Assembly (NCBI GenBank): GCA_001179505.1 | Contig: CDMY01000170.1 | Coordinates: 1-64,000, forward strand | Length of the DNA: 64,000 nucleotides | DNA from: Vitrella brassicaformis CCMP3155 | Taxonomy: Eukaryota > Protista > Chromerida | Direction: 5' to 3' | Part shown: in pieces, positions 20,901 to 57,418 of the stretch | How the letters are laid out: the number at the start of each line of letters is the position of its first letter | Position numbering within the stretch: the stretch's first letter is position 1 | Translations under genes and position numbers: made by a program | The notes under the pieces: generated by a model | What the model saw: the letters and a program-made list of their open reading frames with translations, nothing else | Told to the model about the DNA's origin: nothing | Database searches by the model: none

Positions 20901-23900
20901 TCTTCGCTGGTCGTGTCCATTGCCGTTTGTGTCGTGTCTCGTCTGATAGAGAACTGCCTTTTCACGTGCGCTGTGTAGTCCTGGGACAGAGGGAGGCCCA
21001 GTTTCTGCTCGAGGATGGATGACAAAAGCTCCGGGTTTGTTCGAGAGTACATCGAGGGGTTGGACAGGATGAAGTTGGAGTCGTCGAGGTAGCTCTCGAG
21101 GGCGTCTTCATACAGAGTCTCCAGCGCCTCCATTCGCCGGATGTCGAGCAGCAGTTGTGACGCGAATGCCTCTGACGTGCCGATCAAGAGCGAAGAGAAG
21201 CGGCAGTAGTTGTTTCTGAGGGCTCTGACTGGCATGAGTCCATGCTCCAGCATCGACTTCACTCCTTTGAGGATCGCCTGCAATTCTGAATCGTACAGGT
21301 CGCTGGATGGGAAGTGCTGACAGTCCTCGGGCAGATCCGTTACATACCTGAATGACACATGGACAAGAAGCACGTTGAAAGGTCAGAATTACTGTCTGCG
21401 TGACTACCTGAGAATCGACTGGGTGAGGCTCCTCAGTTCATTGACGACATCAAGACAGTGCTGGAAGATGGTGTGCGTCAACGCTTCAACCACCTCCTTC
21501 TCTGTCGGCCGCATAACTAGTCTCTCCTCATCTCTGCCGCCCCTGCTGTCGTCGTCCTCGCTCCGCGCCGTCACCGCGACCGACTGCTTGTCGGCCTCGA
21601 TGGCTGCGGAGCTGTGCGAGTGTGTCTCGCTCTGGCACATCACACTTGTGGCTGCACTTGATGGTGGCTGGAAGGTGATCTTTGGGATCGATGCCTGCTC
21701 AATGACCTCCCCAAACGCGTCGACGGTCACTGTGTCTGTCGCTAGCGAGACCAGGAAAAGGCTGGAAGCTCGCTTGCGATGTAAGGTGATCAGGGCCATC
21801 GGCGAGATTTCTTCACAGAGAGCCGTCTCCTCGCTGATCTGCTCTTGTTGCAGATCCTCATCCCAGCTGTGCCACTTCAAACGGTCGGCAAAGTCAGCGA
21901 AAGACAGCAGCAACAGTCGCTTAAATTGTGCGGCGCCCATCTTGTTGCCCAGCTGAAGACACGCAATCACTTCTGTGGGCACCTCGGAGACCTTGCCCCA
22001 CCGGTCAACGTCCTCCGGATAGGCTTGTGCGACGATGTGCATCGTCTCTTCGATCACCCGCTTGCTCCACAACTCTTCTATTCGGTTGGCGACAGACACT
22101 CGATGCTTCACCTGGGCGGACTCAAACACCGACACCGACAGCGGCATAGAAAAGATGCTTTCAGTGTCGACCGAGCCGTGCTGTGCGTCCTTTATCGACT
22201 GGCGTGGCGGCGAGGGAGGCCGAGAAACGGCTGGTCCGATCGCCTCGGTCGGCAGGCGAATGAATGCGAAGGAGCGGTCTCTTCCGAGGTCGTCAAAGGT
22301 TGTGAGGATTTGCTGTGTGACGGCCAGCAGGGGCGCATGTGCAACCACAAGCCGGCGGCTCAGAATAGGCAAGGCGTGCCGAAATGCCCGTACATCAGGA
22401 AGAGACGGCCGTCGCTTTGGCTGAGCGATCGGTATTGGGGGGAGGAGACGCAGTCGGTGTCTATGCAACACCTCGTTCCAGCGTTGGTCGAGTCGGAAAG
22501 ACAGCTGGCTGTACGCAAAGTACCACTCCACTTGCAGCAGCAAATCAACCAGGTTCCATCGGTAGCTCTCCATCTTCAGATGTGCGCACTCCTCGGCGAG
22601 CGCACTGCCCTCCTCTGCCACAGAGACCGTCTCCACGTCCATCCTTGTGAACTCCCCGGCCTTCTTCTCCCTCTTCTCCGCCAAATCACGCGGTGTCATG
22701 CCCTCGGGACACGAACCATCTCGCTCGTAGAAAAGAGGTCCACTCGGTCGTCTCCTCTCTGGGCTCAAAAACCGTCCGCCAGCATCTTTTCTTGGCCGGA
22801 AGCCGGCACTGTCGAAGCACAGGGATGGCGGTGGGAGTTTGGAAGACACGAGAGATCGAATAACAGAAGGGGATAGGCCGCAGAGCACCGCGATGTTGTG
22901 TAAGCGCGCGAGAGGCAGGCGATACGGCGGCATCACGTGAGTCCACTGATTCTCCGTGATGTACAGATGGCGTCGCAGCCTCTGCTCGGCTTCCTCACGG
23001 CGCGACGCAGCCGCGACCACGTGGGCAGCAAACTCTTGTGGGTCATCTCGCTGAAGCCTGAGCTCCATCCTCGTGACCGACCGCGGCTGCCTCTCGTATT
23101 TATCTCTCCATCTGGCGCCCTCCTCGCCTTGCAGCATCACATACTGGATGAAGGCACTTGTAAGCGGATGGGTGGGAGGCATCAAGACAACTGTTGCCGT
23201 GCCATGGTACGGCTGGACAGAGACTATGTGGCACGGCGTCCATAGCATTTGTGTGATGGGTTCGACGGGCCATGTCTCCGTTACCGATCGGGCTTCGAGC
23301 TTCAAGGGAAGCTGCGTCTCTCCTGCAAATGGGCACACAAGCCATCAACAGACATCTGGATATCCGAATGCTTGATCGATACCTACTTACCGAGTTCGCC
23401 AGTGTGCACGTCATCAAGAGTGGCAAAGGACACGCCCCCCTCGATTTGCGTATCGAAGTACTCTAATGGAAGCCGTGGTCGGCTCTGCAAATCTTCCAGC
23501 AGAGCGTTGAAGCGCAAGGACGAAGGCGGCTCGGCCATCGTCTCTGTCTCAATCTCTGACGCCTCCTCCAGCCGCCCTCTGGCTGTCCTCGCCCTTTCCC
23601 GCTCTCTGAGCACCGTCAGTCCCTTGACAGCAACAGGCGCCCTCTGTGCCAGAGTGATCGACACCGGCGGCGCACGCGAAGACATGGGGCGGGACGATGG
23701 CAGAGGCGAGACGGTGCGGGGGCGAGGGCTGGCCGGCTTACTTTTACTCCGTGCTTTTGGCCTCGCCTGTGGGGTCGTCGACGTCATCCGACGAGGGTAC
23801 CAGACGAGGGGAGGCACCGGGGGGGGCCGCCGTTGATGGCTGCGAGGCCCAGCCGATGCCGACATCGGACGCTGTCTCGTGGCCGCTTTCGGGGGCGCCG

Positions 23901-24827
23901 ATGACGCGCTCGCCGGCCTGCTCCGTGCGAAGGGGGTATGCAGCCCCTCACTGCTGCTGCCCCCATCCGTGAGCACACTCTCCCTCCCGCCCCTCTTAGG
24001 CAGGGGGGTTGGCGTAGTGGTCCTGTCGCTGGCACTGGCTGCTGGCAGCGGGGTGGTGTTGGTCGGCGTGTGCGTCGTCTGGGGAATGAAGGCGGTCGAG
24101 TCATCAAACGATGGCGCGGCTGACGGGGGGCGACGACGGGCCGCTGGGGGTTGTTCCTCCTCCCCTCCCTCTTCCCTTTTACTCGCCCTTCTCGCTTCTT
24201 TCTCCATTTCGTGTAGCTCGGTCATGCCGCTGCCCATCCGCCGTATCTTGATATGATCGAAGGGCAACTTGGCCTGACCAATCTCAACTTTCTCTTCACG
24301 CAGATTTCTTGCCCACGGCATCGGGGGAGGGAACCGTGGATAAGGCGGCGCCTTCGGGGCGGTCTTGGGCCGCTCCCTCGGTGTCTTCATGACCAGCTGA
24401 GGGGGAATGATCACTGCAAACACATAAGACCGATTGAGATGCGCGATTGTGAAGGTTTTCGCTCACCTTTCCGTGGCATCAGCTGAAACCTCCGCCTCAG
24501 TTTGGCTTCGTGAGCCACTTCCCACGGCCGGATGTAACTCGAGGTTTGCAGCACCAGCTCCGGCACATCAACGGCGCTCTCCTCCTCCTCTTCATCGGAC
24601 TCTCGTTTCTCCCTCTCTCTCACCACCTGCAGCTGATCCCTGAGCGTCCTCTCGGCTTTGCAGAGTTCGTTGCAGGCGCGCTGCAGGCGGACGAGGCGGC
24701 TTTTCGCTGGACCGTATCCTCGGAATCGCTCGAGGGTCTTGTCGGCCGGGGGAAGGGAAAGAGCACGGCGATCACTCATCGTCGAGATCTGAGGTTGCTT
24801 GTGACAGCTTCTCCTGGGGGCGTCCAT
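2932..24827 (-). CDS. Giant divergent axonemal dynein heavy chain (DNAH1-like), multi-exon, roughly 6,500-7,000 aa (estimate)
   Basis: Consecutive minus-strand ORFs join through GT-AG introns (checked at 24466/24414, ~19.6-20.4 kb, ~16.78/16.72 kb, ~14.33/14.28 kb, ~9.2 kb). DNAH1-type N-terminal motifs: LPLEYFD and RMELRLQRDDPQEFAAHV..RREEAEQRLRRHLYI. Pre-AAA1: FEWLSCFRVY and YGFELL. AAA1 remnant: PLNPWTIVACT..RRDVPTTLSEAFRNV. P-loops: GSSSVGKS (AAA2), GPAFSGKS with VMIDDL (AAA3), GPAASGKE (AAA4). Stalk/MTBD: KKPKNETKKIVQTTCVALG, DFW, ALYVWCKAI. AAA5: RRWLPPLIYDP, VHPDFRLYL. AAA6: GEALKQGTLVVVHDAHLA. Stop at 2932. Confidence 0.88.
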
Positions 24828-25061: not shown

Positions 25062-28060
25062 TCACACATCGGCCCACCCCGCCGTCTCTCGTCTGTTGGC
25101 ACGGATCGCCTCATTGAGTGTCGGGATGAGCCATGCGTCGCTGCCCATTCTCTGCCACGCTGCCCCCGCTGCCCGCGGACTGCCGGTGACACCCTTCCCA
25201 TCCCCCTGAGGCTCCTCGGTGCTCCAGAGGTGGATGTGTGCTCCAGGCCATATCCCGGTGCTCATGTAGATATGCGCCGCAAACGCGTCGCTGGCATTCT
25301 CGCCAGAGATGATGACACATCGAGATGTGGTCCCACGGTTGAACATGGTGCAGCCCCACGGTGGGGTCCATTGGGTGACGAGCTGACGGATTCGGGAGGC
25401 CGCAGCAGAACATGACGGATACTCGACACGTGCCACACAATGCGACCCCTGGCCGATCATCCTGAAAGTGGTAAGGACAAACACGATTGAAGGTGAGCCC
25501 TGGCTGCTGCTGTGGTGTGGTCTTCGCATACTCAGCAGCCACCACGCTGCGAAATGTCCCCGACAGATGCTGATCGTTATCTGGGTCATGATGCTGACCT
25601 ACACACAAGTAGTGCACAACGTGTAAAGGCCTGTGCTGGTTTTCCGTCTTAGCTCACATGTGCGGCTGCAGCCAGGGTCGGCTGCAGAGGCGCTGTCCCC
25701 GACTCCGTAGTATAGCACTAGCTTGTGGTTGCCGAGCCAGTAGTTGGGCCACGACGTGAGCTCCATGGCCCTGCCGAGTCGACGGCTGAACAACGAATAC
25801 TGCCTCATGCTCGCCGCCTGGCTCTCGAGGTCCAGGGAAAGCACATCCCTCCAATCGAGCTGGATGGGCAGTGACTCGAGCCGGCCGCAGCGCATCGCCA
25901 GGCAGATCAGCCGCACGCTGCCCGCCCAGTCGCCGCCATTCGCCAACGCCTCACGCAGACGGATCAGCTGACGGGGACTGCTCGATCTGAGCGGCTCATA
26001 TGCGATCACGCCCGTGAGGCCCTTCTGGTGGATGAGGTCGTCGATGGCTGACGTCAGTGCGGCCTTGTCCACGACCACGTCCAACTGCAGACAGAAACCA
26101 TGAAAAGGATATCGCTCACCCACATACAGCTGTGGTGTCGCCCTGCATTCGGTACGCTTTTGGCTGACCTGATAGACCTCTAGTCTTCGTGCAATGAAGC
26201 CCTGTTGCTCGTGAGTTCGTGGCAGTGGCCCGGGAAGCATCTGGCTGATACCGTGAATATCTGCCCACCCCCAGCACCAGATGACCTCCAGAAGCGTCCA
26301 CCTTCGCTCGGGCCCCACCTACGCTCGCACCAGTCATCTCGATGAAGGTTCCAGGTGCCGATTGAGATGTGTGGGGGCCCGCCAAGGTCCTGAGCTGGCC
26401 GTCGGTGTGGAAGGCTGTGACGTGGCCACTGTCTTCCAAGCTGTCTTCCTCCATGACGAAGACGAGACCACAAGCCTTGCCCACCTGCTGCGGCAGCCTA
26501 TCACAAGACCAGCCGTGTGCATCGCTTCTGAAAGAATACAGACAGACACAAAGACGCGCATTAGAGAGAGACGGATGGATTGATGGATGGCCCGCTGCTT
26601 GGGTGCCTCATCTGCCTGTCTATCTATCTTGCCTCATTCACTCACTCACGTGAAGAGGCGGCGCAGGTGGTAGTTGTGTTGGTAGGTGATGGTGCGGGCG
26701 AGGGCGTCCATGTCGTCACGGGAGAGTATCTGTGGGTACGCCGTCGAGCAGGCCATACACACCGCACTCGTACAGCAGGTCGTCCATCTTGTCACTTGTG
26801 GTCGTCGGCGGGGCCACTCGGGTGCCGGCAGGGAGGACGCGAAGGCGACGGGCACAGTCCACGATCCTGCAACACACGAACACGCACACAATACACAGAC
26901 AAAAGACAAAGGTGTCCGGATGGTGTGTGTATTGTGTTACTCGGTGAAGTGGTCCGCTGACTCAGCCGCTACTGGTCCACGATACCTGAGGAGAACGATC
27001 AAGGCAGACTCGATCTCCCAGAGTGTGTGGGTCCGCGTGCCCCTCCTTACGTATCGAATCGGTTGCACAGCGCGGTGGTCGTGTTCTGCAGAGTCGACTG
27101 GGTGGTGCTGATAACCCTGGTGGGCTGCCCATTGGCCCCCGCCACTCGTACGGAGCTAATCGACTCGGTACCGTCACTGGGCCGCAGGAAGGGAGCGATC
27201 ACCTGACACACACATACACGCACACATACACGCACACATACACGCACTCTCACCCACACATACATGCATTGACCTTCCCCTCCCCTCTGCCACTCTCACT
27301 TTGATGCCGCGGAGTGTGCGATAGTAGAGGGCCTTCTTGGCCGCCCTCTCACGCGACAGCTGAGCTTCCTTGGCGGCGAACTCCTCCACGAACGTCTGCA
27401 TGGCACCCAGGAGGCCGCTGAGGTGCGGCGGAAGCCACTGGGCCTGCACGGACGGCCGACGGGTGACGAGCTGGTTGTGTGCCGCCTCGACATCTGGTGT
27501 AGGTGTAGGGGGCGATAGCAAGAACTGAATCCAATCACAGGTGCCACCTGCTCACACACGCACACACACACATGGAACAAGCACGATGATGCAGACCAAT
27601 GCATGTGGTCGCGTCCCACCCCAGCCCATCCCTGACCCCACTCACCGTTGTAGAGTCCGCTCGCTGCCTCCCGTTTTAGCAGCGCCACACCCGCCGCCCC
27701 GTCACGCACCTCGCTGAGAATGGTCTCGAAGGCTCCCGGGTCCACATCCAAGAACACCCGGTTGTCGTCGTCCCTCGCGAAGCGGCCGTCCCACCTGCCC
27801 GAGAACAACGAGGCCATGACCGTGCCAGGCGCCAGTGTGAGGTGCCTTCTGGCGGCAGTGAGCGGCCGGCCGCCCACGTTGAGCTCCAGCAGGTCGTCGC
27901 CGGAGGCTGCCGACTCGTCAGACGCACCATGAGATCTCAGCAGCTCGTCCAGGTCGTAGGAAGCGGCGATTTCTTTCTCATCAGCTGCGAGGGCCTCGAA
28001 GGCTGCCTCGATTTGCGTCTGAAAGCGGGCAGCGGCTTGCGGGGCGGTGAACAGATCCAT
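25062..28060 (-). CDS. BTB-BTB-TLDc protein fused C-terminally to the lineage-family domain also seen in the F-box-like genes; apparent +1 frameshift near 26740
   Basis: BTB: LLELNVGGRPLTAARRHLTLAPGTVMASLFSGRWDGRFARDDDNRVFLDVDP. Second BTB ends LLYECGVYGLLD. TLDc-like: YPQILSRDDMDAL..LRRLFTSDAHGW..GLVFVM and GFIARRLEVYQV. Family domain: SAIDDLIHQKGLTGVIAYE..GGDW..LPI..YSLFSRRL and YPS..WGC..CVIISGENASDAFAA..STEEP..SPRAA. The frame switches at CTC GAC GGC GTA CCC. Confidence 0.7.
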
Positions 28061-28331
28061 AACTGCACTCACTGCATGTCGGCCCAAGCAACCTGCAGCC
28101 ACGGAAATGAGAAGAGTCAGTCAATGCATTCACACATTCGTCAGCCAGGCATCACGCACCTGTTCGACGCGCGGTGTCAGTCAGAAACTGCCAGTCTGCT
28201 GCCGCCCTCAGCTAAAGAAGGAGTCGGTCGGCTGAGCCGGGCGGGTGCTTCGCCCAAATGGATGAGGGCTGCTGCGGGGGGGTGCTTGGCTGCTGCTGAA
28301 AGTAGATGCGTGGATTGCTTCTCTCTTTTAT

Positions 28332-31881: not shown

Positions 31882-33880
31882 TCATGCAAGGCTATAGACT
31901 TCCATTTCATCGAGCTCAAAGTGGAAACCCAATACAGACACGGGACGAAACAAACCCAGCAGACACTCGACAGTATGTCCTTGCCAACTGGCCGGGCTGG
32001 CCCGACACTCGACAGTTGGTCGCTGCCAACTGGCCCAGTGGTCAGGCTCACTGCCTTCAACTGCGAAGCCCTGGCACTTGTTGAGCAGTGTGTCCATGGC
32101 TGCCTTGGGGACGCCACCCTGGGGGATGCCGATGTCCATCCCCGGCGGAGCCAGCAGGCAGGACAGATTTGTCGGCGCATTGGTCATGTCCAAGGTCTCT
32201 GTCTTCTCCTCAATCCCAGCCAGATGAATCGTCTTGAAGCGGGCATAAGGACCGACGTAGGGGCAGTTCGCCGTGCCCTCGAGCTTGTAGCTGAAGACAA
32301 GCGTAGGTGGCATGGTTTTCTGCGGTCCTGACACGTCGATCCTGCCATCAACGACCACAGCAAACAGCTCGCCACTGAAGGGCACAACACACTTCAGTAC
32401 TCTGCCTGTGTTGTGCGTGCCCATTCCGCCGTCTGTCTGTCTGTCTGTTTGTCTGTCTACCTGTCTTTGACCCGCATGATTATGATCAACGGTTTTTGGC
32501 CCCTGACGGCATCGACAAAGTCCAGCCAACGCCACCCATCAACCGACGCCCTGCAAACAAACGGTCAGTGCAATACAGTCGTCCAAACTCCTGCTCTCTT
32601 GGCTGGCAACTTCAGTCACTTGTAGATGCGCTCGATCGGCTCGCCCACATGAGACGGCAACACGGGCAGGGCGAAAGGCGCCCCGGGATGTCCCCATTTC
32701 TGTTTCTGTCTCCATTCCTTGATGTTGTGCAGGTGCTGGCTCTTGAGCAGGCCGTCAGTCGGGCCGAGGTACCGATCGGCGCCGATGCCGAAGACGTCGA
32801 GCGCCCGACGGAATTGAGAAGCACTGACATCGCCCATTGCCTCCCGCACGTCAGCTGATGTGATGGTCCGGCGCTCCTGGTGGGCTCGCACAGCGACGTC
32901 GACGACACGGCGGACGCAGTCGAGGCCAAAGTCAATGGAGCCGTTGTAACTGAACCACAGCAACAGCAGACCACCATATGAGTGCCGGCGGATGGCGTCC
33001 ACCAGTGCCGTTGTGCTCTCGCCGAGTGAATCGTCCGTAGAATGTGCTGTCCTCTCCGCCTAACGACTTGGCCGCCGCGTGGGTGACCGTCACAGTGCAG
33101 CCAGTCGACTCATCGATGGAAACCAGCTGAACAGACATCCGTCCGAGACGATAGAGATGGAAGCCTTTCCATCGCTCTCTTTGTATGTGCACCTGATCGT
33201 CATCTGTGTTGCCTCTCTTGAGGAATGGTTTGACAGCGTCCAGGCGGGCCAGCTCATGTGCCTTGGCCTCCTCAATGTGCCGAACGGTGACGGCCAAATC
33301 TGACACCAGACGCGAAGCCACACTGCCGTCAGCTGCTGCAGTGGCGGTGCTGCTGGTGCTGATATCTTGGTCGGCCGATGGGTCGTAGAGGAGAGTGTGC
33401 ACCCAATACCTGACCACACACACACACGCGTGCGCCGAATCGAGCACAATCCGACCGCAGGGGGGCTCGTGTGATGGATCACTCCCTCACTTGTATGGGA
33501 GATCTGTCTGTTTCGCCGCCGGCAAATCGATGACGTCGACGTCGCCCAGCTCGTAGTGACGCAGCTGCTCAACCAACCTGACACAAACAACACAACGTAA
33601 CACAAACAACACTGCAAACGTGACCACACTCCCTACGTCTGTCCTTCGTGTGAAGAGCTGACCATCTGAAGGCCGGTGGGTACGCTGGAAGGAAAATGCG
33701 ATCGGTCGAGTCGCGGACGACCGCACCGTCGAAGCAGCCGCCAAACAGCGAGGCCAGGACAGATCCCTTCTTGACACACAGAGTGGACCGCCTTACGCCG
33801 CGAAAGACCTCGCCGCTGACATTGAGGTATAGCTTGTCCGTGGCCATCTGGTCGGCCGACAACTCTGTGAAGTCCGCCAT
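31882..33880 (-). CDS. BTB/POZ-BTB-TLDc domain protein (copy 2, inverted paralogue of 1-2046)
   Basis: MADFTELSADQMATDKLYLNVSGEVFRGVRRSTL. Same exon layout as copy 1, intact TLDc frame, ends FELDEMEVYSLA*. A coiled-coil-like ORF starting at 33993 is in another frame, so the true start is uncertain. Confidence 0.78.
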
Positions 33881-34039
33881 GCCGCCCACTCTGTGATGCG
33901 CTGGCGGACCTCGGCCTCGGCTCTGCAGATCTCCTCATTGATCAATGCCTTCTGCTGCCGCCCTGCAGCGGCGTGGCGCCTCAGATCCGCCATCTGAGCT
34001 AGTCTCTACATCCTTTTGATTCCCTCCTTCGCCTTCGTT

Positions 34040-34337: not shown

Positions 34338-36188
34338 TGAGTGAAATGGCAACGAGGGATCAGCTGCTCAAACAGATTCAGACCTATCAGACCAATCAGA
34401 CGAGGGTATCTGACCGACACACTCACTCAGTCACTCATTCAGTGCATCCACCGCTCATCGGTTGACTGCTCGTGTTGTTTGTGTGTGGTGTGGTGTGCAG
34501 GTCAACAATGGCATCGGCCGACTCACTCAGATGGACGCCGCTGCGATCACACCACTGGTGCGGCAGGCTGGCAACCAGCACACTGACAACCGCTCACAAC
34601 AACACAAAGGCCTCCCTCTGTGTCATGGTGCTCTCGTCGTGTTGATTCATTCGTCAGATGGTGGCCAAGGTGAGTCGTCAATTTGCTGCTGTGTCCGAGC
34701 TGCTGGCCGAGTTGGCAGAGACCATCAACTCGACCATCGCACTCACAAGACATAGCCGCACACAGGTCAGAGAGGGAGTGACCACAGGCAGGCACAAACA
34801 CAAGGCCCTCACTGATGTGGTATGCTCCTCTTATGTGCTGTGTGTGTGCATGTCCTTCTGTCTGTGTGTCATCAGGCCCAGCGGTTGTACATCTCTGACA
34901 TTCCCGCCAACCCCATGAGCATCATCCTGTCACTGTCTGCCCTCACCACCATCGCCCACCTCAAGGCGACAGCCCGACCCATCAGAAATGCCCTGCGGCC
35001 CATCGTCCGCAATATTCGGCTGCCGGAGGCCATCGAGGTGGCGGGGGTGGGCGGTGTGGTGCAGTTCGACGATCAGCTGAGCCACGGCGATGTGATGAAG
35101 GCCATGTGGGTGGTGGAGGAGGGGGGCGAGGGCGGCTGGGGGGAGGTGGCCGACACACTCAGATTCGGTGAGCATTTGGGCTATTGCCAGCTGCCGGTTA
35201 CTGTGGGTGCCGGAGATCTGCAGACACACCCCACCAAGGCGGTAAGCACCACACACAGAAGAGGCAATGGGTGAGCTGCTGGAAGTCTCTGTGTGTGTTG
35301 GGTGTGAGACTACTCATCGCTGCCCCGTTTCTGTGCGCTGTGGATGGTCGTCGGCCGCCGTGTGGCCCTCCGTCGCCCAAATGGCCAGCAAGACGGCACA
35401 CTGCAGCTGTTCCGCCATAACCATGAGATTCGCGCCATCCGCAACGAGCCCAACTTCGCCATCGTCATCAACCCGCCCCTCCCCCTCCCCAACCGCCGCG
35501 TCCATTCCTTCTCGCGCCACCCCTTCCAGCAGCACGCCAAGCCCCACGACCCGCCCGTCAGCAGCCGCATTCTGTGGGATGGTGGTGTGGGCTGGACGCC
35601 TGGTGGTGTGAACGACGGGGGCGTTTTCTCATCGGCGAGTTGCCTGCTGAAGAAGCTGATGCTGACTCACCGGATGCTGGCTGTGAGCGACATCTCCTAT
35701 TCGCCACCAGTGGCGGTAGACCGGTAAGTGGATGAAGAGGGCAGGTCGCTCGTTGTCCCTTTCATACATGTATCTGTGTGTCAGGAGTGTTCGTGGTCAT
35801 CTGAATCGTATGCTGACCCGACCGCCTCACACGCCCCTTGACGACTGCTCACACATGATGGCATCCGAGGCGGTCAGTGGGGGGTGTGGGCAGTCGCATG
35901 TGCTGACGTCATCGGACGACTCGTTCGTCGCCTGGATTGCCTTCCGCACCCTTCAAGGCGACAACCAGAACGGTATGCTTACACGTAAGAGAACAGCAAC
36001 TCGACAACACCTGTTGTGCCGTCCGTTGTCTGCGTGCAGTAGAGGTCAGCATCCGTACCACCGAGGCGCCAGCAGCAGGTGTGGCCAATGATGCGCCCTT
36101 TGCCCAGCAATTCCCACGGACGGCCGCCAAGGCCCGCCGCGTCCTCGGGCCGATCGCCGCCATCGTCCTCGACGGCCAGGCACCGTAG
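34338..36188 (+). CDS. Coiled-coil + F-box-like + lineage-family domain protein (one acceptor near 35308 is out of phase, possible pseudogene)
   Basis: Spliced exons: MSEMATRDQLLKQIQ; LYISDIPANPMSIILSLSALTTIAHLKATAR (F-box-like); LPEAIEVAGVGGVVQFD..VMKAMWVVEEGGEGGW..LPVTVGAGDL; HPFQQHAKPHDPPV; FVAWIAF; IRTTEAP..QQFPRTAAKARRVL..*. These match the 49-57 kb genes. Confidence 0.6.
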
Positions 36189-49525: not shown

Positions 49526-51844
49526 ATGACCGCTGTCGAGCCTCATCTGAGCCGTCTGCCTGATGATGTCGGACGGGAGCTCAAGCGGCACCTCTCGGTC
49601 GCCAGCTGCGGTGCGCTGCGAGCCACATCAAAATGTGGTGGCTGCCATCTCATCAGCGAGGACTACCTGACGCGCCGCCTCGACGATGCCATCCACAACA
49701 AGGACCTCAGCGGCGTGCTGGCCTACAAGAAGCCCCCCACGACGAGCCTGGCGTTTCTGCTGCATTTCGCCACGGCCGTCTACAGCGGCCTGTCGGCGGG
49801 TCTTGCCAAGTTATTCCCACTCATCGTCTTGGTGTCTGTGATGCTTCTCGACCTCCATCCTGTGGTGGCCGCCACGTGCAAGGAGCCCACGGACGGGGCG
49901 GCGTGCGAGTGGCTGGCTTCTTGGGCTCGATTCCTGTTGGCGAGTGGGGTAGTGATTGGTGGCTGGTGGCTGCTTCCGGGCGGCTCCATCTGGGACTCGT
50001 TCTTTGCCCTCCGCAATACTGATGCGGGCGCCCGGTTTTTCTGCGGCCGTGTGGGCTGTCTGGTGGTGGTGGTGGTGACAAGCATTGTCGATTGGAAGGA
50101 ATCGCTGGCCGACCACGTCAGGGGGATCTTCAGCGGTGACCTGAACGGCGCGCTGGACCATTGTGTGTCGATTTCCGCGTCCTTCTATGTTTCTGTCTTT
50201 GCGGCAGAAATAGTCCTGATACCAGTCGGCAACTGGGTGAGGAGAATCAAGTCAGAGATGCCGATGGGCCATGCGGAGTATCTGTTGCGTCTGCTGCACG
50301 TCATGGAGGAGGGCGGCTGCTGGGACCGGACTGTTCAGCTCATCTATTACCTCGAGAACAGCTGCATCATTCCCTCGCTGCCCATTATCATCGCACCGGC
50401 TGACCTGCGACAAGTCGGCAGTCGGGCACTGTTTGACTCTCGGCCACCGGCAGTCCGCCAGCTCTCCCTTCTCATCTACAAATTGGTTCCGGGCCTCTCC
50501 CTGCATGTCCAGCGTACCACCAACAGCCAAGACGATTTGGCCGGCCAAGACGATTTGGGAGAGTTGTTTGGGCCGCACCGGCAGGTGCTGACTTTCCTCC
50601 CCATCGAGGCGCTGATGCCAACGCATCTTCCCTTCAGCTGCGCAGCAAGGGCGGCGGTGGTCATGAAGGAGGGAAGTGAGCACCTTGCCGACGCCGCCAA
50701 AGGGACTGTTGTAGGCTGCCTTGGCCGGCAGGTAATACGGTGCTGTAGCCAGCCAAAGAACGCACGCACGGCGCACAGACATGTCGGTCAGTGTGACTGA
50801 TGGCACGGGTTTGTCAGGTCCGGGCGTTGGCTGCTTTGCCACCGGAGCAGCTGTCGATGCGGATCGATGAGTTCAAGGGATCCCTCATTGGCAATGCCGA
50901 TATTCTCTCACGCCTACTGTCCGAGTTGCAATGACGTACGTACGAGTGCGTCCGTCGCACCCGTGCCATCTGACTGCTGTCCCCTGTCTGTCCGCAGGAG
51001 GAGGCTCGTGTGCTGGACGACATGGCGACCTTGGCGGCGCTCGCCGAGCGACTCGATGGCCAGCGGAGAAAGGCGCTCCTTGAGCTGCTTGGCGCTGGGG
51101 GAAAGCAAAAGGATTCAGTGCTTGTCGCTCTCAGCCACAGCTCAAATGTCAAGGTGAGAAAGGAAGGCAGCACAGATTTGATATCGACTCGGATCAGTGG
51201 CGACAAGGTGATGTGCCGCGTCGTGTAGGTGAAGGATGCGGCAGCTGCGCTGACAGCGACCCTCACGGATGCGATTGCCACCCTCTCCGTCTACCAATCT
51301 GATCCGCCCACCAAACGTGAGAGACCAATCGAAAAAAGGCGGAGAAAAGACAGCACATCACTCACCGTTTGCTCTTCTCGTGCGCCTGATTGTCTCTCTG
51401 TCTCTAGGAGGCAATGACATCTACTCTTCGTTCACGGACTCCATCCTATATCTCGCTTCCCATGCGCCTACTGGGCCTCGCCCCTATCAACTGACCCCTG
51501 ACAGCGTCCTCTCGCCCTCTGAGCAGCGTCGACTCGCAGACAAGCTCAGATTTGAGCTCACCTACAATGTCGTGTGGGGATGCCGCAAGGCGCACAAGGC
51601 TGACGGCAGAAGACCGGACGACCCGAACCGTGACAATCGGGACGAAGCGATAGTCATTCTCTGTGGGGATCGTACGGGTGACGACTTCGCTGCCTCTTTG
51701 TGGGTCGTGCGCCGCAATTGCGGTCCCATGACGGGCCAGACACTGGGGTTCGACATCCGCACCACGGAGACCCCTACGGGAAGCAAGCGTTGCACACAGC
51801 AGTGCTTCCCTCGCACGGCAGCGCTCATCCGCGACAAGCTGTAA
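49526..51844 (+). CDS. F-box-like/lineage-family protein, tandem copy A, with ~175-aa hydrophobic insert; 2-nt deletion gives an in-frame TGA at 50932
   Basis: N-terminus LSRLPDDVGRELKRHLSVASCGALRATSK. Conserved YLTRRLDDAIHNKDLSGVL and EYLLRLLHVMEEGGCWDRTVQL..SRPPAVRQLSL. Last exon YSSFTD..WGC..AIVILCGD..DDFAA..IRTTETP..FPRTAALIRDKL*. Copy A reads CTCTCACGCC where copy B reads CTCTCACCCGCC. Confidence 0.75.
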
Positions 51845-52699
51845 GCATAGGCCTCTCAAGCAAACAGACAGAACAGGTACGACGGCTGACAGAGGGGGAC
51901 CATGGGAACTCCTTTGATAGCCGCTGGCTGACTGCAGGTGGTCGTTTGCATCCTGTGCGGCTGCCTACATGATTTCTTGGGACCTAGCGATGCGACACAG
52001 TGTCTGTTTGTGCTGTACGTATGTATGTACGTATGTATGTACGTATATTTGTGTGATTGGACCGATCCATCTGTAAGGTAAGCTATTTGTGTGTACGTAT
52101 GTAGACAGATTCTCTATCATGTGCTCCTGCTGTAGCTAAGCTAGGCTCGGCTACTCGCTCTCTTTGTCCATCCCTCCCTCTCTCTCTCTCTCTCTCCATC
52201 TATCCATCCATCCTGGCCGTCCATCTGTCGGATTTTGCGAACGTTTTTCCGCCGCCCACCGCAGTGAGACGATGGATGGCACGGTAAGACGGTTGCGTGC
52301 ATCATGTCACACTCATGCTGTCTTTGGGGTGTGCGTGCCGTGGTGTATGGTGGATGTGGAGCAGCTTTTTGATCGGTCGAGAGAACAGCCGGTAACTCCC
52401 CACGTGTGGATGGATGCTGCGTGTGAATGTGGGCTGGTGGATGGGTGTGCTGTATTGTTGATGGCACGGTTGACTGGGCAATTGGTCGGCTGTCTGCTGT
52501 CTGCCTGCCTGCGATACTGCCTGCCTGTGTGCATGGTGTATTCTCTGACGGATTCTCTGCCAGTCTCCCAGCCATGTCGTCGTCTCGCTATCCATAAGCA
52601 TCTCTAAGCCCATCCCACATCTCTATGCCGGTCGAATGTAAGCTCGCAGGAAGGTCTCTCCCCGAGTTCCCAGCCTTGTCAGCAGAGCTGTGAAACACG
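51845..52699 (+). repeat. Conserved intergenic spacer of the tandem array (near-identical to 55084-55921)
   Basis: Both spacers begin GCATAGGCCTCTCAAGCAAACAGACAG and stay near-identical up to GCTATCCATAAGCATCTCTAAGC. Confidence 0.9.
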
Positions 52700-55083
52700 A
52701 TGTGTAGGAGCCGTCCGAGCTGCCTGCCTGACGACATTATAGATGATCTGAAGCGAAATCTGTGTGCCGCCAGCTGCGCTGCTATCCGAGCCACATCAAA
52801 GCGCCTCGGCTGCCATCTCATCAGCGAGGACTACCTGACGCGCCGGCTGGACGATGCCATCCACAACAAGAAACTCAGCGGCGTGCTGACCTGCAAGAAG
52901 CCTCCCACGACGGCACTGGCGTTCCTCCTGCACTTCGCCACGGCCGTCTACAGCGGCACTCGGAGCGGCCTGTTGGTTTGTCTCGCCAAGCTGAGTGTGT
53001 TCATTTTCCACCTCGCCGTCGGGGCGCTCCTGTACTTTTTCGCGCCCCTCTACCCGCTGCACATCGGCTATTGGAAGCTCGTGGAGGTTACGGTCGGCTC
53101 GCAGTGCAAGTGGCTCAGCTTCTGCACGGAGATTTTCCTGCTCGTCTTCCTGCTCCCAAAGGCGTGGGCTTGTATCTCCCCGCGACTTCCACGGGGGTGG
53201 TGGTTGCTTCCAGACGGCTCCGTCATTCTGCGGGCTGGCGACATCCTGGTCGAACTGGCCGAAAGTTTCGACATTATTGCACTGTCTATCGATGGCTATA
53301 CAGGGTGGAAGTTGGCGATATGGGTATTGTTGCTCGCGCGACTCTTCATTCCGAGCGACAGCCACTTAAAACTAGTACTCTTCCCGGCTGACATCCTTAC
53401 GGGAATCTTCAGCGGTGACATCAAGACAGCGGCAGGGAGCTGCATCTATCTGTGCGGGTCCGTCTGTATTGTCTCTTTGGCGTGGCTCAATATGTACCGT
53501 CTACTCGGCAAGTGGCTGGGGAGAATCGTGTCGGAGCGGCCGATGGGCCGTGTCGAGTACTTGCTGCGTCTGCTGCATGTCATTGAGGACGGCGGCTGCT
53601 GGGACCGGACTGTGCAGGTCATCTGTTATCTCAAGAACAGTCACATGATTCCCTCGCTGCCCATCACCATTACACCCGGCGACCTGCGACAAGTCGGCAG
53701 TCGGGCACTGTTTGACTCTCGGCCACCGGCAGTCCGCCAGCTCTCCCTCATCAGCCACAGATTGGTTCCGGGCCTCTCCCTGCAGCGCACCCCCAACGGC
53801 CAGGACCATTTAGGCGAGTGGCTTCGGCACGACCGGCAGGTGCTGACTTTCCTCCCCATCGAGGCGCTGATGCCAACGCACCTTCCCTTCAGCTGCGCAG
53901 CAAGGGCGGCGGCGGCGATGAAAAGGGGAAGTGAACACCTTGCCGACGCCGCCAAAGGGACTGTTGTAGGCTGCCTTGGCCGGCAGGTAACATGACGCTG
54001 AAGCCAGCCCCACGCACGGCGCACATCAATGTGGCTGATTGCACGGGTGTGTTAGGTCCGGGCGTTGGCTGCCTTGCCACCGGAGCAGCTGTCGATGCGG
54101 ATCGATGAGTTCAAGGGATCACTCACTGGCAGTGCCGACATTCTCTCACCCGCCTACTGTCCGAGTTGCAATGACGTACGTACAAGTCCGTCCGTCGGAC
54201 TCGTGCCACCTGACTGCTGTCCTGTGTCTGTCCGCAGGAGGAGGCTCGCGTGCTGGACGACATGGCGACCTTGGCGGCGCTCGCCGAGCGTCTCGATGGC
54301 CAGCGGAGAAAGGCGCTCCTTGAGCTGTTTGCTGCTGGGGGAAAGGATTCAGTGCATTTTCCTGTAAGCGGCAGCTCAAATCTCAAGGTGGGAAAGGAAG
54401 GCAGCACAGATTTGATATCGACTCGGATGAGTGGCGACAAGGTGATGTGCCGCGTCGTGTAGGTGAATTACGCGGCAACTGCGCTGACAGCGACCCTCAC
54501 GGATGAGATTGCCACTGTCTCCGTCTACCAATCTGATCCGCCCACCAAAGGTGAGTGGCCCGGCCGAGATCAGACAGGCGGAAAAGACAGACAGCACGTC
54601 ACTCACTGATTGCTCTTCTGGTGCGCCTCACTGTCTGTCTGTCTGTCTTTGGCCGGCAATTACATCTACTCTTCGTTCACGGATATCTTCCTACATGTCG
54701 CCTCCCATGAGCCTACTCGGCCTCGCCCCCCTTACCCTGACAGCATCCTCTCACTGTCCGAGCAGTGTCAACTCGCAGGCAAGCTCAGATTTGCGCTCAT
54801 CTACGATGTCGTGTGGGGCTGTCGCAAGGCGCACAAGGCCGACGGCAGAGGACCGGACGACCCGGACCGCGACAATCAGGACGAAGCGATAGTCATTCTG
54901 TGCGGGGATCGTGCTAGTGACGACTTCGCTGCCTCTTTGCGGACTCGGCGTCGCAATTACGGTGGCATGACGGGCCAGACACTCTACTTCGAGATCCGCA
55001 CCACGGAGACCCCCGTGACCAGCGATGGTGGCACACAGCAGCGCTTCCCTCGAACGGCAAGGCTCGTCCGCGACAAGCTGTAA
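52700..55083 (+). CDS. F-box-like/lineage-family protein, tandem copy B, with ~210-aa hydrophobic insert
   Basis: SCLPDDIIDDLKRNLCAASCAAIRATSK; same scaffold motifs and exon layout as copy A; the frame appears intact to RDKL*. Confidence 0.8.
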
Positions 55084-55921
55084 GCATAGGCCTCTCAAGC
55101 AAACAGACAGAACAGGTACGGCGGCTGACAGAGGGGGACCATGGGAACTCCTTTGATAGCCGCTGGCTGACTGCAGGTGGTCGTTTCAATCCTGTGCAGC
55201 TGCCTACATGATTTCTTGGGGCCTAGCGATGCGACACAGTGTCTGTTTGTGCTGTACGTATGTGTCTACGTATATTTGTGTGATTGGACCGATCCATCTG
55301 TAAGGTAAGCTATTTGTGTGTACGTATGTAGACAGGTTCTCTATCGTGTGCTTCTGCTGTAGCCAAGCTAGGCTACTCGCTCTCTTTGTCCGTCTCTCCC
55401 TCTCTCTCTCTCCATCCTGGCCATCCATCCATCTATCGGATTTTGTGACATGTTTCCCGCCGCCCACCGATGAGGGCGGCCACCGGTAAGACGTTTGCGT
55501 GCATCATGTCACACTCATGCTGTCTTTGGAGTGTGAGTGCCCTAGTGCATGGTGGCTGTGGAACAGCTTGTTGATCGGTCAAGAGAACAGCCGGTAACTC
55601 CCCACGTGTGGATGGATGCTGCGTGTGAATGTGGGCTGGTGGATGGGTGTGCTGTATTGTTGATGGCACGGTTGACTGGGCAATTGGTCGGCTGTCTGCT
55701 GTCTGCCTGCCTGCGATACTGCCTGCCTGTGTGCATGGTGTATTCTCTGACGGATTCTCTGCCAGTCTCCCAGCCATGTCGTCGTCTCGCTATCCATAAG
55801 CATCTCTAAGCGTCTCTGTGTCTGGGACGAGCCGGTCCAATTTAAGCTCGCAGGAAGGGGAACACAAAGCTGGAGTGTTTGTTTCGCGAAGTTCCCAGAC
55901 AACACAGCAGAGCTGTGAAAG
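55084..55921 (+). repeat. Second copy of the array spacer
   Basis: Near-identical to 51845-52699. Confidence 0.9.
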
Positions 55922-57418
55922 ATGATGAGTAGGAGCCGTCTGAGCTGCCTGCCTGACGACATTATAGATGATCTGAAGCGCCATCTGTCGGCCGCCAGCT
56001 GCGGTGCTGTCCGAGCCACATCAAAGCGCCTCGGCTGCCATTTCATCAGCGAGGACTACCTGACGCGCCGCCTCGACGATGCCATCCACAACAAGAAACT
56101 CAGCGGCGTGCCGGCCTACATCAAGCGCCCCGAGACGGCCCTGCAGCGCGTCACCGCTGTCCGCAGCTCGGTGTCGACATGCCTCAGACATTTTGCCGCC
56201 TTCGCTGTGGAGTGGATCGCAGCTTTGGTCACGATGGCTGCGCTCCTGGCTGTTGTGTTTCTCCTGGTGCCATGGACGCTGAAACTGCATTGGGTCTTGC
56301 AGGTGCCTTTCTGGGCTGCTTCCTTCTATCTCATGGGGACGGTGCCGCACGCGTTGGAACTCTTGGGAGATGAGGGCATGACGCGGGTGCACAACATGGA
56401 GACCGAGGCCTTTACCTACTTTCGAGAAATGTGGCGATCTGCCTGGAGGGCCCTGTGGATATGGGTCCGGTCGAGAGATAGGAAGGTCAGAAGCCGGGTG
56501 GACTACTTGTTGCGTCTGCTGCACGTCATTGAGGAGGGCGGCTGCTGGGACTGGACTGTGCAGCTCATCTATTACCTCGAGAACAGCCGCATCATTCCCT
56601 CGCTGCTCATTATCATCGCACCGGCCGATCTGCGACAAGTCGGCAGTCGGGCACTGTTTGACTCTCGGCCACCGGCAGTCCGCCAGCTCTCCCTCATCAG
56701 TCACCGACTTGTGCTTCAGCTCGAGACAGCCGACGGTCCAAAGACCCTGATAGTGCGTCTTCAACGTCGTGCGAATGGTCAGGAGGATCATTTGGATGGA
56801 CAGCTCCTGACCTTCCTGACGCCCAGTACGGTGCCCGACACGCTGCCCTTCAAAATCGATGAGTTCAATGCATCCGACCCGCCCACCAAATGTGAGTCGC
56901 GGTGAAGAAAAGGGCACCGGGCGGCATGGATAGGCCGGCATGTGTGTGTTTGTGTCTACCGGTCATCAGGGGATCACAACATCTACCCTTCCTTCACGGA
57001 CCTCATCATTCATATTGCCTCGCGGACGGCTCGCTCTCACGACGGCGCCTTCGACGAGCGCCCACGAATTATCATCGCGTCCGAAATCGTGCATGGAAAC
57101 GACCAGCAGCTGCAGTCGGCAGACCGACAAATCGCGGCCAGCCGGGGGCCCGTCTGGGAGGGCTGCCGCAGGGCCGACAAATGTGGCGGCACACCAACTG
57201 CTCACGAGACGATCCTGATCCTCTGTGGGGACAAAGCTGGTGACGAATTCGCCGTCTCCTATGACATCTTCCTCCCTGTGGCGCAGGTTACTGCGGCGGC
57301 TGACATCGTTATCCGCTGGATCATCACGACGGAGCCTCCTGTCACCCGCCATTGTCGCCCGGCGGCCCAGCGCTTCCCTCGTACAGTGGCAGTGGTCCAC
57401 AAAAAACTGCTTAGATAG
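55922..57418 (+). CDS. F-box-like/lineage-family protein, tandem copy C, with a different ~120-aa hydrophobic insert
   Basis: LSCLPDDIIDDLKRHLSAASCGAVRATSK; VDYLLRLLHVIEEGGCW; single intron 56892-56969; IYPSFTDLIIH..WEGC..ILILCGDKAGDEFA..ITTEPP..FPRTVAVVHKKLLR*. Confidence 0.8.

What the first reader, a model, noticed from the sequence alone, without database searches (positions are those of the whole stretch)
49526..57418. Tandem F-box-like array with a hypervariable, membrane-like cassette at a fixed site in a conserved scaffold
Three head-to-tail genes share near-identical scaffolds and ~850-bp spacers. Between ..LSGV(L/P)(A/T)(Y/C)(K/I)K(P/R)P and (E/D)YLLRLLHV each carries a different in-frame, intron-free hydrophobic insert with several TM-like stretches: A 49735-50260 (~175 aa), B 52900-53540 (~210 aa), C 56125-56490 (~120 aa, not alignable by eye to A or B). 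The homologues at 25.9 kb and 35.05 kb have only about 7 aa at this site. Coding inserts diverging far faster than the adjacent non-coding spacers points to cassette exchange or strong diversifying selection, as in recognition or immune-type receptors. A membrane-inserted, variable F-box adaptor family is not something I recognise as described.
Basis: partly seen in the sequence, partly recalled or inferred. Interest (0 to 1): 0.75.

Follow-up and report, generated by a model that had tools for sequence, protein, structure and literature searches.

The report
Membrane-type F-box-like gene array, Vitrella
Three neighbouring genes of the alga Vitrella brassicaformis belong to a large family found only in this alga, and their very different greasy middle parts come from ordinary fast drift plus copying between neighbours, not from a cassette-swapping system.

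Summary
Three head-to-tail genes (A 49526-51844, B 52700-55083, C 55922-57418) share an F-box-like N-terminus and two conserved domains (D1, D2). At one fixed site they carry hydrophobic in-frame segments of 179, 216 and 123 aa. Spliced transcripts keep these segments, so they are not introns.

The cassette or immune-receptor reading is not supported. At least 24 genes carry such a segment at this site, and they form one clade of a family of over 100 matches. Only Vitrella proteins were identified among its relatives in 1.84 billion representatives, so one origin is likely. A and B segments are homologous (z 22-29). No donor copies exist in the assembly. Among recent copies the segment has the same synonymous divergence as its flanks, with dN/dS about 1.

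Synonymous divergence differs about tenfold between segments of one gene pair (B-C: N-terminus 0.11, D2 1.44). This mosaic fits gene conversion or unequal crossing-over acting on the conserved parts only.

F-box-like identity has sub-threshold but convergent support. Membrane insertion is likely for C and marginal for A and B. D1-D2 has no known fold. The result is an orphan adaptor-like family with a membrane-type subfamily, and its evolution looks ordinary.

The parts
49526..51844 (+). Gene A (protein P0002, 628 aa); exons about 49526-50731, 50998-51156, 51232-51318, 51410-51844
   Evidence: Exact peptide mapping of the annotated Vitrella protein onto the window
49547..49735 (+). Gene A N-terminal F-box-like domain plus following helix (NT)
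   Evidence: NT HMM boundaries. AF2 helices at 13-22, 25-34 and 38-42 with pLDDT 90-97
49736..50272 (+). Gene A hydrophobic variable segment, 179 aa
   Evidence: AF2 gives long helices at 72-117, 125-147, 168-203 and 206-243
50273..50491 (+). Gene A conserved domain D1 (YLLRLLHV..GGCWD..LPI..RQxSL)
   Evidence: D1 HMM; pLDDT 96
51413..51835 (+). Gene A C-terminal domain D2 (IYSSFTD..ILCGD..FPRTAALIR)
   Evidence: D2 HMM; alpha+beta with pLDDT above 90
51845..52699 (.). Intergenic spacer 1; 92.7% identical to spacer 2, with 300-nt stretches at 97%
52700..55083 (+). Gene B (P0098 = CEL93459.1, 649 aa); exons about 52700-53989, 54059-54175, 54238-54390, 54466-54552, 54781-55083
   Evidence: The transcript-derived P0001 matches 52718-53989, 54059-54175 and 54238-54303 exactly
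52904..53551 (+). Gene B hydrophobic variable segment, 216 aa
55084..55921 (.). Intergenic spacer 2
55922..57418 (+). Gene C (P0006, 472 aa; named 'F-box domain-containing protein' in UniRef); exons about 55922-56890 and 56972-57418
56129..56497 (+). Gene C hydrophobic variable segment, 123 aa, with one strong TM-like helix (WIAALVTMAALLAVVFLLV)
   Evidence: The MMETSP transcript protein P0005 matches 56234-56713 exactly
56972..57403 (+). Gene C D2 domain, strongly diverged from the D2 of A and B (dS 1.1-1.4)
25599..26318 (-). Short-linker relative in the same window (about 4-10 aa between NT and D1)

Best explanation
A, B and C are neighbouring paralogs of a large family for which only Vitrella brassicaformis members were identified. 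The basic protein is an N-terminal F-box-like (in some relatives BTB) domain, a short linker, and two conserved domains (D1, D2) of unknown fold. That layout matches a cullin-RING ligase substrate adaptor (inferred). In one ancestor of a subfamily of at least 24 genes, the linker between the F-box-like domain and D1 was expanded once into a bundle of hydrophobic helices. This bundle most likely anchors the protein in a membrane (inferred; strong for C and most of the subfamily, marginal for A and B). The bundle is constrained only to stay open, helical and hydrophobic. It therefore changes by near-neutral substitutions (dN/dS about 1) and in-frame indels, two to three times faster than the scaffold across the whole subfamily. 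In the tandem array, gene conversion or unequal crossing-over repeatedly homogenises the parts that are still similar enough to pair: N-terminus, D1, downstream exons and spacers. It cannot cross the diverged bundle. The outcome is a mosaic in which nearly identical scaffolds and spacers flank old, very different middles. Gene C is the extreme case. Its N-terminus and D1 are A/B-like (dS 0.1-0.4), while its insert and D2 are as far from A and B as a different subclade (dS above 1).
For: The inserts are retained in spliced mRNA-derived proteins. At least 19 further distinct genes have a 127-299 aa hydrophobic segment at the same site, always in one open frame with NT and D1. Insert-bearing members sit on one side of a branch (SH-aLRT 97, one change, 0 of 500 shuffles as low). 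Insert identity tracks scaffold identity across the subfamily. A-B (scaffold 0.78, insert 0.42) is typical, whereas A-C and B-C (scaffold 0.82-0.84, insert 0.27-0.29, D2 0.37-0.38) combine within-subclade scaffolds with between-subclade insert and D2. Segment dS values are: A-B NT 0.48, insert 1.04, D1 0.25, D2 0.20; B-C NT 0.11, insert above 3, D1 0.26, D2 1.44. Among the recent copies A, C527a and C527b, insert dS is 0.12-0.14 against 0.10-0.13 for D1, and omega is 0.95-1.25 with a 95% bootstrap range of 0.55-2.4. No other copy of the B or C insert exists in the assembly. The two spacers are 92.7% identical, locally 97-100%. F-box-like support has six parts. A short-linker relative passes the Pfam F-box-like cut-off (32.1 vs 24.3 bits) at the homologous position and is followed by D1 and D2. 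Five of 24 NT segments hit F-box-like or F-box at E down to 7e-4. hhalign against bona fide Vitrella F-boxes gives P 1.4e-4, in register at the LP motif. The best PDB profile hit is the cyclin F F-box (E 0.29). The AF2 helix pattern fits, and the nearest Atlas clusters are F-box proteins (scores 0.79-0.81, below the tool's 0.9 level, so a lead only). Skp1 is encoded in the genome. On hydrophobicity, 13 of 21 inserts have a 19-aa window with summed Hessa dG below 0, while 18 control relatives and the non-insert parts have minima of 2.2 or more.
Against: Membrane insertion is not shown. A and B have no window with summed dG of 1 or less (minima 2.3 and 1.3), their helices contain charged residues, and no dedicated TM predictor was available. 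The F-box assignment of A, B and C themselves is below Pfam thresholds, and hhalign probability is only 52%. Tree-based tests of C's mosaicism were not decisive (AU p 0.34 and 0.16), so that case rests on segment dS and identity values. dS in poorly alignable insert regions is inflated by alignment error. An omega of about 1 can hide a mix of purifying and positive selection. The order and direction of conversion events are unresolved. D1-D2 has no significant fold or family match, so the adaptor role is inferred from architecture alone.
Confidence: 0.6

Rival explanations
1. Cassette exchange: whole hydrophobic segments are swapped into a fixed site from donor loci, as in antigenic-variation or receptor-diversification systems.
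For: C's insert is unalignable to A and B although its flanks are 82-84% identical in protein and up to 97% in DNA. Identity changes sharply at the insert edges.
Against: No second copy of the B or C insert exists in the 72.7-Mb assembly by DNA or protein search. A and B inserts are homologous along their length. Inserts follow subclade phylogeny. C's D2 is as divergent as its insert, so the boundary pattern is not specific to the insert.
Confidence: 0.08
2. Strong diversifying (positive) selection on the insert as a recognition surface, as in immune-type receptors.
For: Point estimates of omega in the insert are 0.95-1.25, against 0.27-0.79 in the flanks, among A, C527a and C527b. The insert evolves two to three times faster than the scaffold in all pairs.
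Against: All bootstrap intervals include 1 (0.55-2.4). Synonymous sites in the insert are saturated between A, B and C too, which amino-acid selection cannot explain. The segment is hydrophobic and helical, the kind of sequence that tolerates change as long as composition is kept.
Confidence: 0.15
3. The hydrophobic segment is not transmembrane. It would be a soluble or peripheral helical bundle, for example an oligomerisation module or a monotopic hairpin for lipid droplets or organelle surfaces.
For: The A and B helices carry Asp, Glu, Arg and His, and their summed dG minima are positive (2.3 and 1.3). AF2 draws four long helices of 23-46 residues, longer than a bilayer needs, including a 164-246 hairpin resembling generic soluble hairpins.
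Against: C and 12 other subfamily members have segments with dG down to -5.3. Mean hydropathy is 0.3-1.2 over 123-299 aa in all 21 inserts. Controls never approach these values.
Confidence: 0.2
4. The inserts are unspliced introns or decaying junk in pseudogenes.
For: Omega is about 1. Five related loci have NT and D1 in different frames.
Against: Transcript-derived proteins with the downstream introns removed still contain the B and C inserts. All 21 distinct inserts are open over 123-299 codons, where chance openness at this GC content is about 0.1-1% each (my calculation from base composition). Indels among recent copies are in-frame. The flanks are under purifying selection.
Confidence: 0.04

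Closest known systems
F-box substrate adaptors of SCF (Skp1-Cul1-F-box) ubiquitin ligases
   Same: An N-terminal module of about 45 aa has the L-P-[DE]-[DE]-[VI] start and three short helices, followed by a presumed substrate-binding C-terminal part. Relatives carry BTB_2 instead of the F-box-like domain, as expected for interchangeable cullin adaptors.
   Different: A, B and C do not reach Pfam thresholds. The conserved Trp of the third helix is replaced. A 123-299 aa hydrophobic helical segment sits between the F-box-like domain and the rest. The C-terminal domains match no known substrate-binding domain.
Lineage-specific expanded F-box and MATH-BTB adaptor families of nematodes and plants (from my own knowledge: Thomas 2006, Genome Research)
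   Same: A large family confined to one lineage, tandem clusters, one shared C-terminal module combined with either F-box or BTB, and fast evolution.
   Different: In those families positive selection was reported in the substrate-binding domain. Here the fast part is a hydrophobic linker with omega about 1, and D1 is the most conserved part.
FBXO3-type F-box + SUKH (SMI1/KNR4) proteins (PMC3113570)
Concerted evolution of tandem multigene arrays by gene conversion or unequal crossing-over
   Same: Non-coding spacers and conserved coding blocks are more alike than synonymous sites elsewhere in the same genes, and segment-wise dS differs about tenfold within a gene pair.
   Different: No difference in kind. 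The special feature is a block too diverged to be converted, which mimics a cassette site.

Membership tests
F-box / F-box-like (PF00646, PF12937) | Match to the family profile above the curated cut-off | tested here: inconclusive
   A, B and C full length give no Pfam hit at E up to 1. Of 24 isolated NT segments, 5 hit F-box-like (best 7e-4) and 5 hit F-box (best 2.6e-3), all sub-threshold. No insert-type locus is over the cut-off in the genome scan. A short-linker relative on C859 scores 32.1 bits against a cut-off of 24.3 at the homologous position, followed by D1 and D2.
F-box / F-box-like | LPxE-type start and three-helix bundle of about 45 residues | tested here: met
   The consensus is L.GLPEDV..LL..L.A.SCGALRATSK. 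AF2 places helices at 13-22, 25-34 and 38-42 with pLDDT 90-97. hhalign against 11 bona fide Vitrella F-box-like domains aligns 31 columns in register, P 1.4e-4, probability 52%.
F-box / F-box-like | Binding to Skp1 | not testable with these tools
   Skp1 genes are present in the genome. No interaction data are available.
Integral (multi-pass) membrane proteins | Hydrophobic helices of about 19 or more residues predicted to insert (dGapp about 0 or less) | tested here: inconclusive
   C has a window at -3.6, and 13 of 21 subfamily inserts have a minimum below 0. A (2.3) and B (1.3) are marginal. Controls are 2.2 or more, mostly 5-10. Kyte-Doolittle at 1.6 or more gives 3, 3 and 1 segments. No dedicated TM or topology predictor was available.
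SUKH / SMI1-KNR4 superfamily | Significant profile or fold match to the split beta-sheet SUKH core | tested here: not met
Cassette-exchange / programmed diversification systems | Archive of donor cassettes elsewhere in the genome | tested here: not met
   The B and C inserts match only themselves by DNA and by protein search of the assembly.
Cassette-exchange / programmed diversification systems | Mutation or exchange targeted at the variable site in recent copies | tested here: not met
   Among A, C527a and C527b, insert dS is 0.12-0.14, against 0.10-0.13 for D1 and 0.17-0.28 for NT.
Genes under diversifying selection | dN/dS significantly above 1 in the variable part | tested here: not met
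   Omega is 0.95-1.25 with bootstrap 95% intervals of 0.55-2.37. Site models were not run.

The most novel reading that the evidence does not exclude
A clade of at least 24 Vitrella genes encodes SCF-type adaptors that are embedded in a membrane by a multi-helix module placed between the F-box and an orphan substrate-binding module (D1-D2, possibly a very remote SUKH-like fold). They belong to a family of over 100 matches, seen only in this alga, that pairs the same module with F-box-like, BTB, ubiquitin-like, HMG or SAP domains. I found no description of multi-pass membrane F-box adaptors.
Probability: 0.35. Interest if true: 0.6.

Novelty: new variant of a known kind. Interest (0 to 1): 0.42.

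Why it matters
If the proteins really are membrane-embedded F-box adaptors, they would be an undescribed way of bringing SCF ubiquitin ligases to membranes, in the closest photosynthetic relatives of apicomplexan parasites. The D1-D2 module would be a new, species-restricted substrate-recognition domain. More broadly, the locus is a clean worked example of how homology-dependent gene conversion around a fast-drifting block can imitate a hypervariable cassette at a fixed site. This is a useful caution for scans that look for immune-like diversification.

Tried and rejected
- Pfam on the three exon-1 proteins found nothing at E up to 1.
- PDB sequence and profile searches with the full-length, NT and D1-D2 profiles found nothing significant.
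- Foldseek of both AF2 models against the PDB gave no match at E up to 0.001.
- VIA wide search on the 628-aa model returned only generic helical hairpins for residues 164-246.
- For P0009 the Atlas's own model is too poor to use (pLDDT 0.30).
- The SUKH lead was tested with Pfam at E up to 10 and with a genome scan for PF09346. Both were blank.
- AU tests on whether C's D2 falls outside, or its NT+D1 inside, the A/B clade were not decisive.
- A light-gap pairwise nucleotide aligner gave 64% identity even for shuffled inserts, so those insert percentages were discarded in favour of the MAFFT windows.
- The idea of a second independent gene in the spacer was rejected. The ORFs at 51269-51844, 54610-55083 and 56942-57418 are the last exon (D2) of genes A, B and C.
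- Intron and pseudogene readings of the inserts were rejected on transcript and open-frame evidence.
Only database proteins and single-exon references were used.
Full report
**Organism and locus**

The window is contig C170 of a 72.7-Mb, 1064-contig genome. Proteins identical to its ORFs are deposited as Vitrella brassicaformis CCMP3155. This agrees with earlier notes of this scan.

They sit in a tandem repeat of about 3.2 kb. None has a Pfam match at E up to 1.

**Gene models**

Database proteins show that each ORF is only exon 1.
- Gene A is P0002 (628 aa), with exons about 49526-50731, 50998-51156, 51232-51318 and 51410-51844.
- Gene B is P0098 / CEL93459.1 (649 aa), spanning 52700-55083.
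- Gene C is P0006 (472 aa), with exons 55922-56890 and 56972-57418.

The ORFs that look like a second gene in the spacer are the last exon, which encodes a conserved C-terminal domain (D2).

The architecture is:
- NT: an F-box-like domain plus one helix, about 63 aa.
- A variable hydrophobic segment.
- D1: about 72 aa (YLLRLLHV..GGCWD..LPI..RQxSL).
- A linker.
- D2: about 145 aa.

**Are the inserts introns?**

No. P0001 comes from a 2447-nt JGI contig. It matches gene B exactly over 52718-53989, 54059-54175 and 54238-54303. The downstream introns are therefore removed while the whole insert is kept.

P0005 is an MMETSP transcript protein. It matches gene C exactly over 56234-56713, which covers most of the insert and D1. 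Both then continue into another paralog, so they are chimeric assemblies or recombinants.

**The observation**

MAFFT windows of 60 nt show units A and B at 80-100% identity in NT, D1, the downstream exons and the spacers. Identity falls to 43-67% across A 49814-50230 / B 53006-53510. The two spacers are 92.7% identical overall and 97-100% over several hundred bases.

By HMM boundaries the inserts are 179, 216 and 123 aa. All Kyte-Doolittle peaks lie within them.

**Family**

A six-frame search of the genome gives at least 110 matches. A profile search of 1.84 billion representative proteins gives only 83 hits at E up to 0.001.

Pfam on 86 members finds, beside the orphan D1 and D2, F-box-like, BTB_2, ubiquitin, HMG box, SAP and TLDc domains in single members.

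Most members have 4-30 aa between NT and D1. Among the 30 best loci and the window, 21 distinct genes have 123-299 aa there. The segment is always hydrophobic (mean hydropathy 0.3-1.2) and always in one open frame with NT and D1.

On a D1 tree the 24 insert-bearing rows are one side of a branch (SH-aLRT 97). The tree needs one change of state, and 0 of 500 shuffles score as low. The insert is thus a single old acquisition of a subfamily, not a property of these three genes.

**Homology and rate of the inserts**

Local alignment against composition-preserving shuffles shows that A and B are homologous (z 22-29 overall, and 8-9 for the core without its edges). C's insert is not similar to A or B (z 1.2 or less). 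It is only weakly similar to L020 and L029, and mainly at the edges.

Across all subfamily pairs, insert identity falls two to three times faster than scaffold identity.
- A-B (scaffold 0.78, D2 0.73, insert 0.42) is typical for its scaffold distance.
- A-C and B-C (scaffold 0.82-0.84, D2 0.37-0.38, insert 0.27-0.29) combine within-subclade scaffolds with between-subclade values for both insert and D2.

**Selection or ancestry?**

Nei-Gojobori estimates for the recent copies A, C527a and C527b give:
- Insert dS 0.12-0.14, the same as D1 (0.10-0.13) and lower than NT (0.17-0.28).
- Insert omega 0.95-1.25, with bootstrap intervals of 0.55-2.37.
- Flank omega 0.27-0.79.

So there is no targeted mutation and no significant positive selection. 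Constraint is relaxed, while reading frame and hydrophobicity are kept.

Between the array members, synonymous divergence differs about tenfold between segments of the same gene pair:

| Pair | NT | Insert | D1 | D2 |
|---|---|---|---|---|
| A-B | 0.48 | 1.04 | 0.25 | 0.20 |
| A-C | 0.37 | 1.26 | 0.19 | 1.14 |
| B-C | 0.11 | above 3 | 0.26 | 1.44 |

Amino-acid selection cannot do this, so the segments must have different ages. The simplest cause is gene conversion or unequal crossing-over among neighbours. These processes act where homology remains (NT, D1, 3' exons, spacers) and stop at the diverged block.

Segment trees agree in topology. C sits inside the A/B/C527 clade for NT and D1 and outside it on a long branch for D2. 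AU tests do not reach significance (p 0.34 and 0.16), and dS in poorly aligned insert stretches is inflated. I therefore treat the mosaic as well supported but its exact history as unresolved.

DNA and protein searches of the assembly find no other copy of the B or C insert, which argues against a donor archive.

**Is NT an F-box?**

Six lines of evidence bear on this.
- A, B and C are below Pfam thresholds. Five of 24 isolated NT segments hit F-box-like (best 7e-4) and five hit F-box.
- The best PDB profile hit is the F-box of cyclin F, residues 32-58 (E 0.29).
- hhalign against 11 Vitrella domains that pass the Pfam cut-off aligns 31 columns in register at the LP motif (P 1.4e-4, probability 52%).
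- A short-linker relative on contig C859 passes the cut-off (32.1 vs 24.3 bits) at the homologous position. It continues with the same FLTNRIE..GL helix, then D1 and D2.
- AF2 gives the expected three short helices at pLDDT 90-97.
- The nearest Atlas clusters are F-box proteins, but at scores of 0.79-0.81, which the tool treats as a lead only.

Skp1 is encoded in the genome. I accept 'F-box-like'. Skp1 binding is untested.

**Is the insert transmembrane?**

AF2 of gene A's protein (pLDDT 79, pTM 0.70) draws the insert as four long helices at 72-117, 125-147, 168-203 and 206-243, with pLDDT 40-84.

A simple sum of Hessa dG values over 19-aa windows gives:
- -3.6 for C.
- A minimum below 0 for 13 of 21 inserts.
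- Minima of 2.3 for A and 1.3 for B.
- 2.2 or more (mostly 5-10) for 18 control relatives and for the non-insert parts.

Membrane insertion is therefore likely for the subfamily and for C, and marginal for A and B. Topology, including whether the helix number is odd or even, could not be determined.

**D1-D2**

AF2 of a natural D1+D2 protein (P0009) is confident (pLDDT 88, pTM 0.85). Foldseek finds nothing.

F-box plus SUKH is the FBXO3 architecture (PMC3113570), so this is an attractive lead, but it is not established.

**Verdict**

The sequence pattern is real and the family appears undescribed. The 'hypervariable cassette' is best explained by three things:
- A single-origin hydrophobic linker.
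- Composition-only constraint on that linker.
- Concerted evolution of its conserved surroundings.

The remaining interest lies in two possibilities: that these are membrane-embedded F-box adaptors, and that D1-D2 is a new module seen only in Vitrella.

Noticed in passing
window 27296-28102 (-) and 33569-33889 (-): These ORFs have KCTD/BTB_2-like sequence (LELNVGGR.., LYLNVSGEVF..) and lie next to D1-family members at 25599-26318 (-) and 34822-35274 (+). They may be BTB-type relatives of the same family in the same window.
   Followed up: no
proteins P0001 (JGI) and P0005 (MMETSP, A0A7S1JVF7) mapped on window 52700-57000: Both transcript-derived proteins switch paralog midway: B then C527b-like, and C then B. 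They are either assembly chimeras of near-identical paralogs or real recombinant transcripts.
   Followed up: partly
L046 (G000:C859:13500-18500): This is a tandem pair of short-linker relatives whose N-terminus passes the Pfam F-box-like cut-off and is followed by D1 and D2. One copy contains a masked run.
   Followed up: partly
L011, L014, L016, L019, L022: In these insert-type loci NT and D1 lie in different reading frames. The cause is either an intron inside the hydrophobic segment or a frameshift in a pseudogene.
   Followed up: no
L005 (G000:C814:1402-5514): NT, insert, D1 and D2 lie in one 583-aa open frame without introns, whereas genes A and B have three to four introns after exon 1.
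   Followed up: no
window 50998-51318 and 54059-54552: Genes A, B and the C527 copies have an extra helical linker of about 110 aa (EEARVLDDMATLAALAERLDGQ..) between D1 and D2, encoded by small exons. Gene C and the C200/C814 genes lack it.
   Followed up: no
window about 5000-24500 (-): Long ORFs here have weak dynein heavy chain matches (DHC_N2, AAA_6, AAA_7). Others in this scan have already noted them as a dynein with a degenerate AAA1.
   Followed up: no
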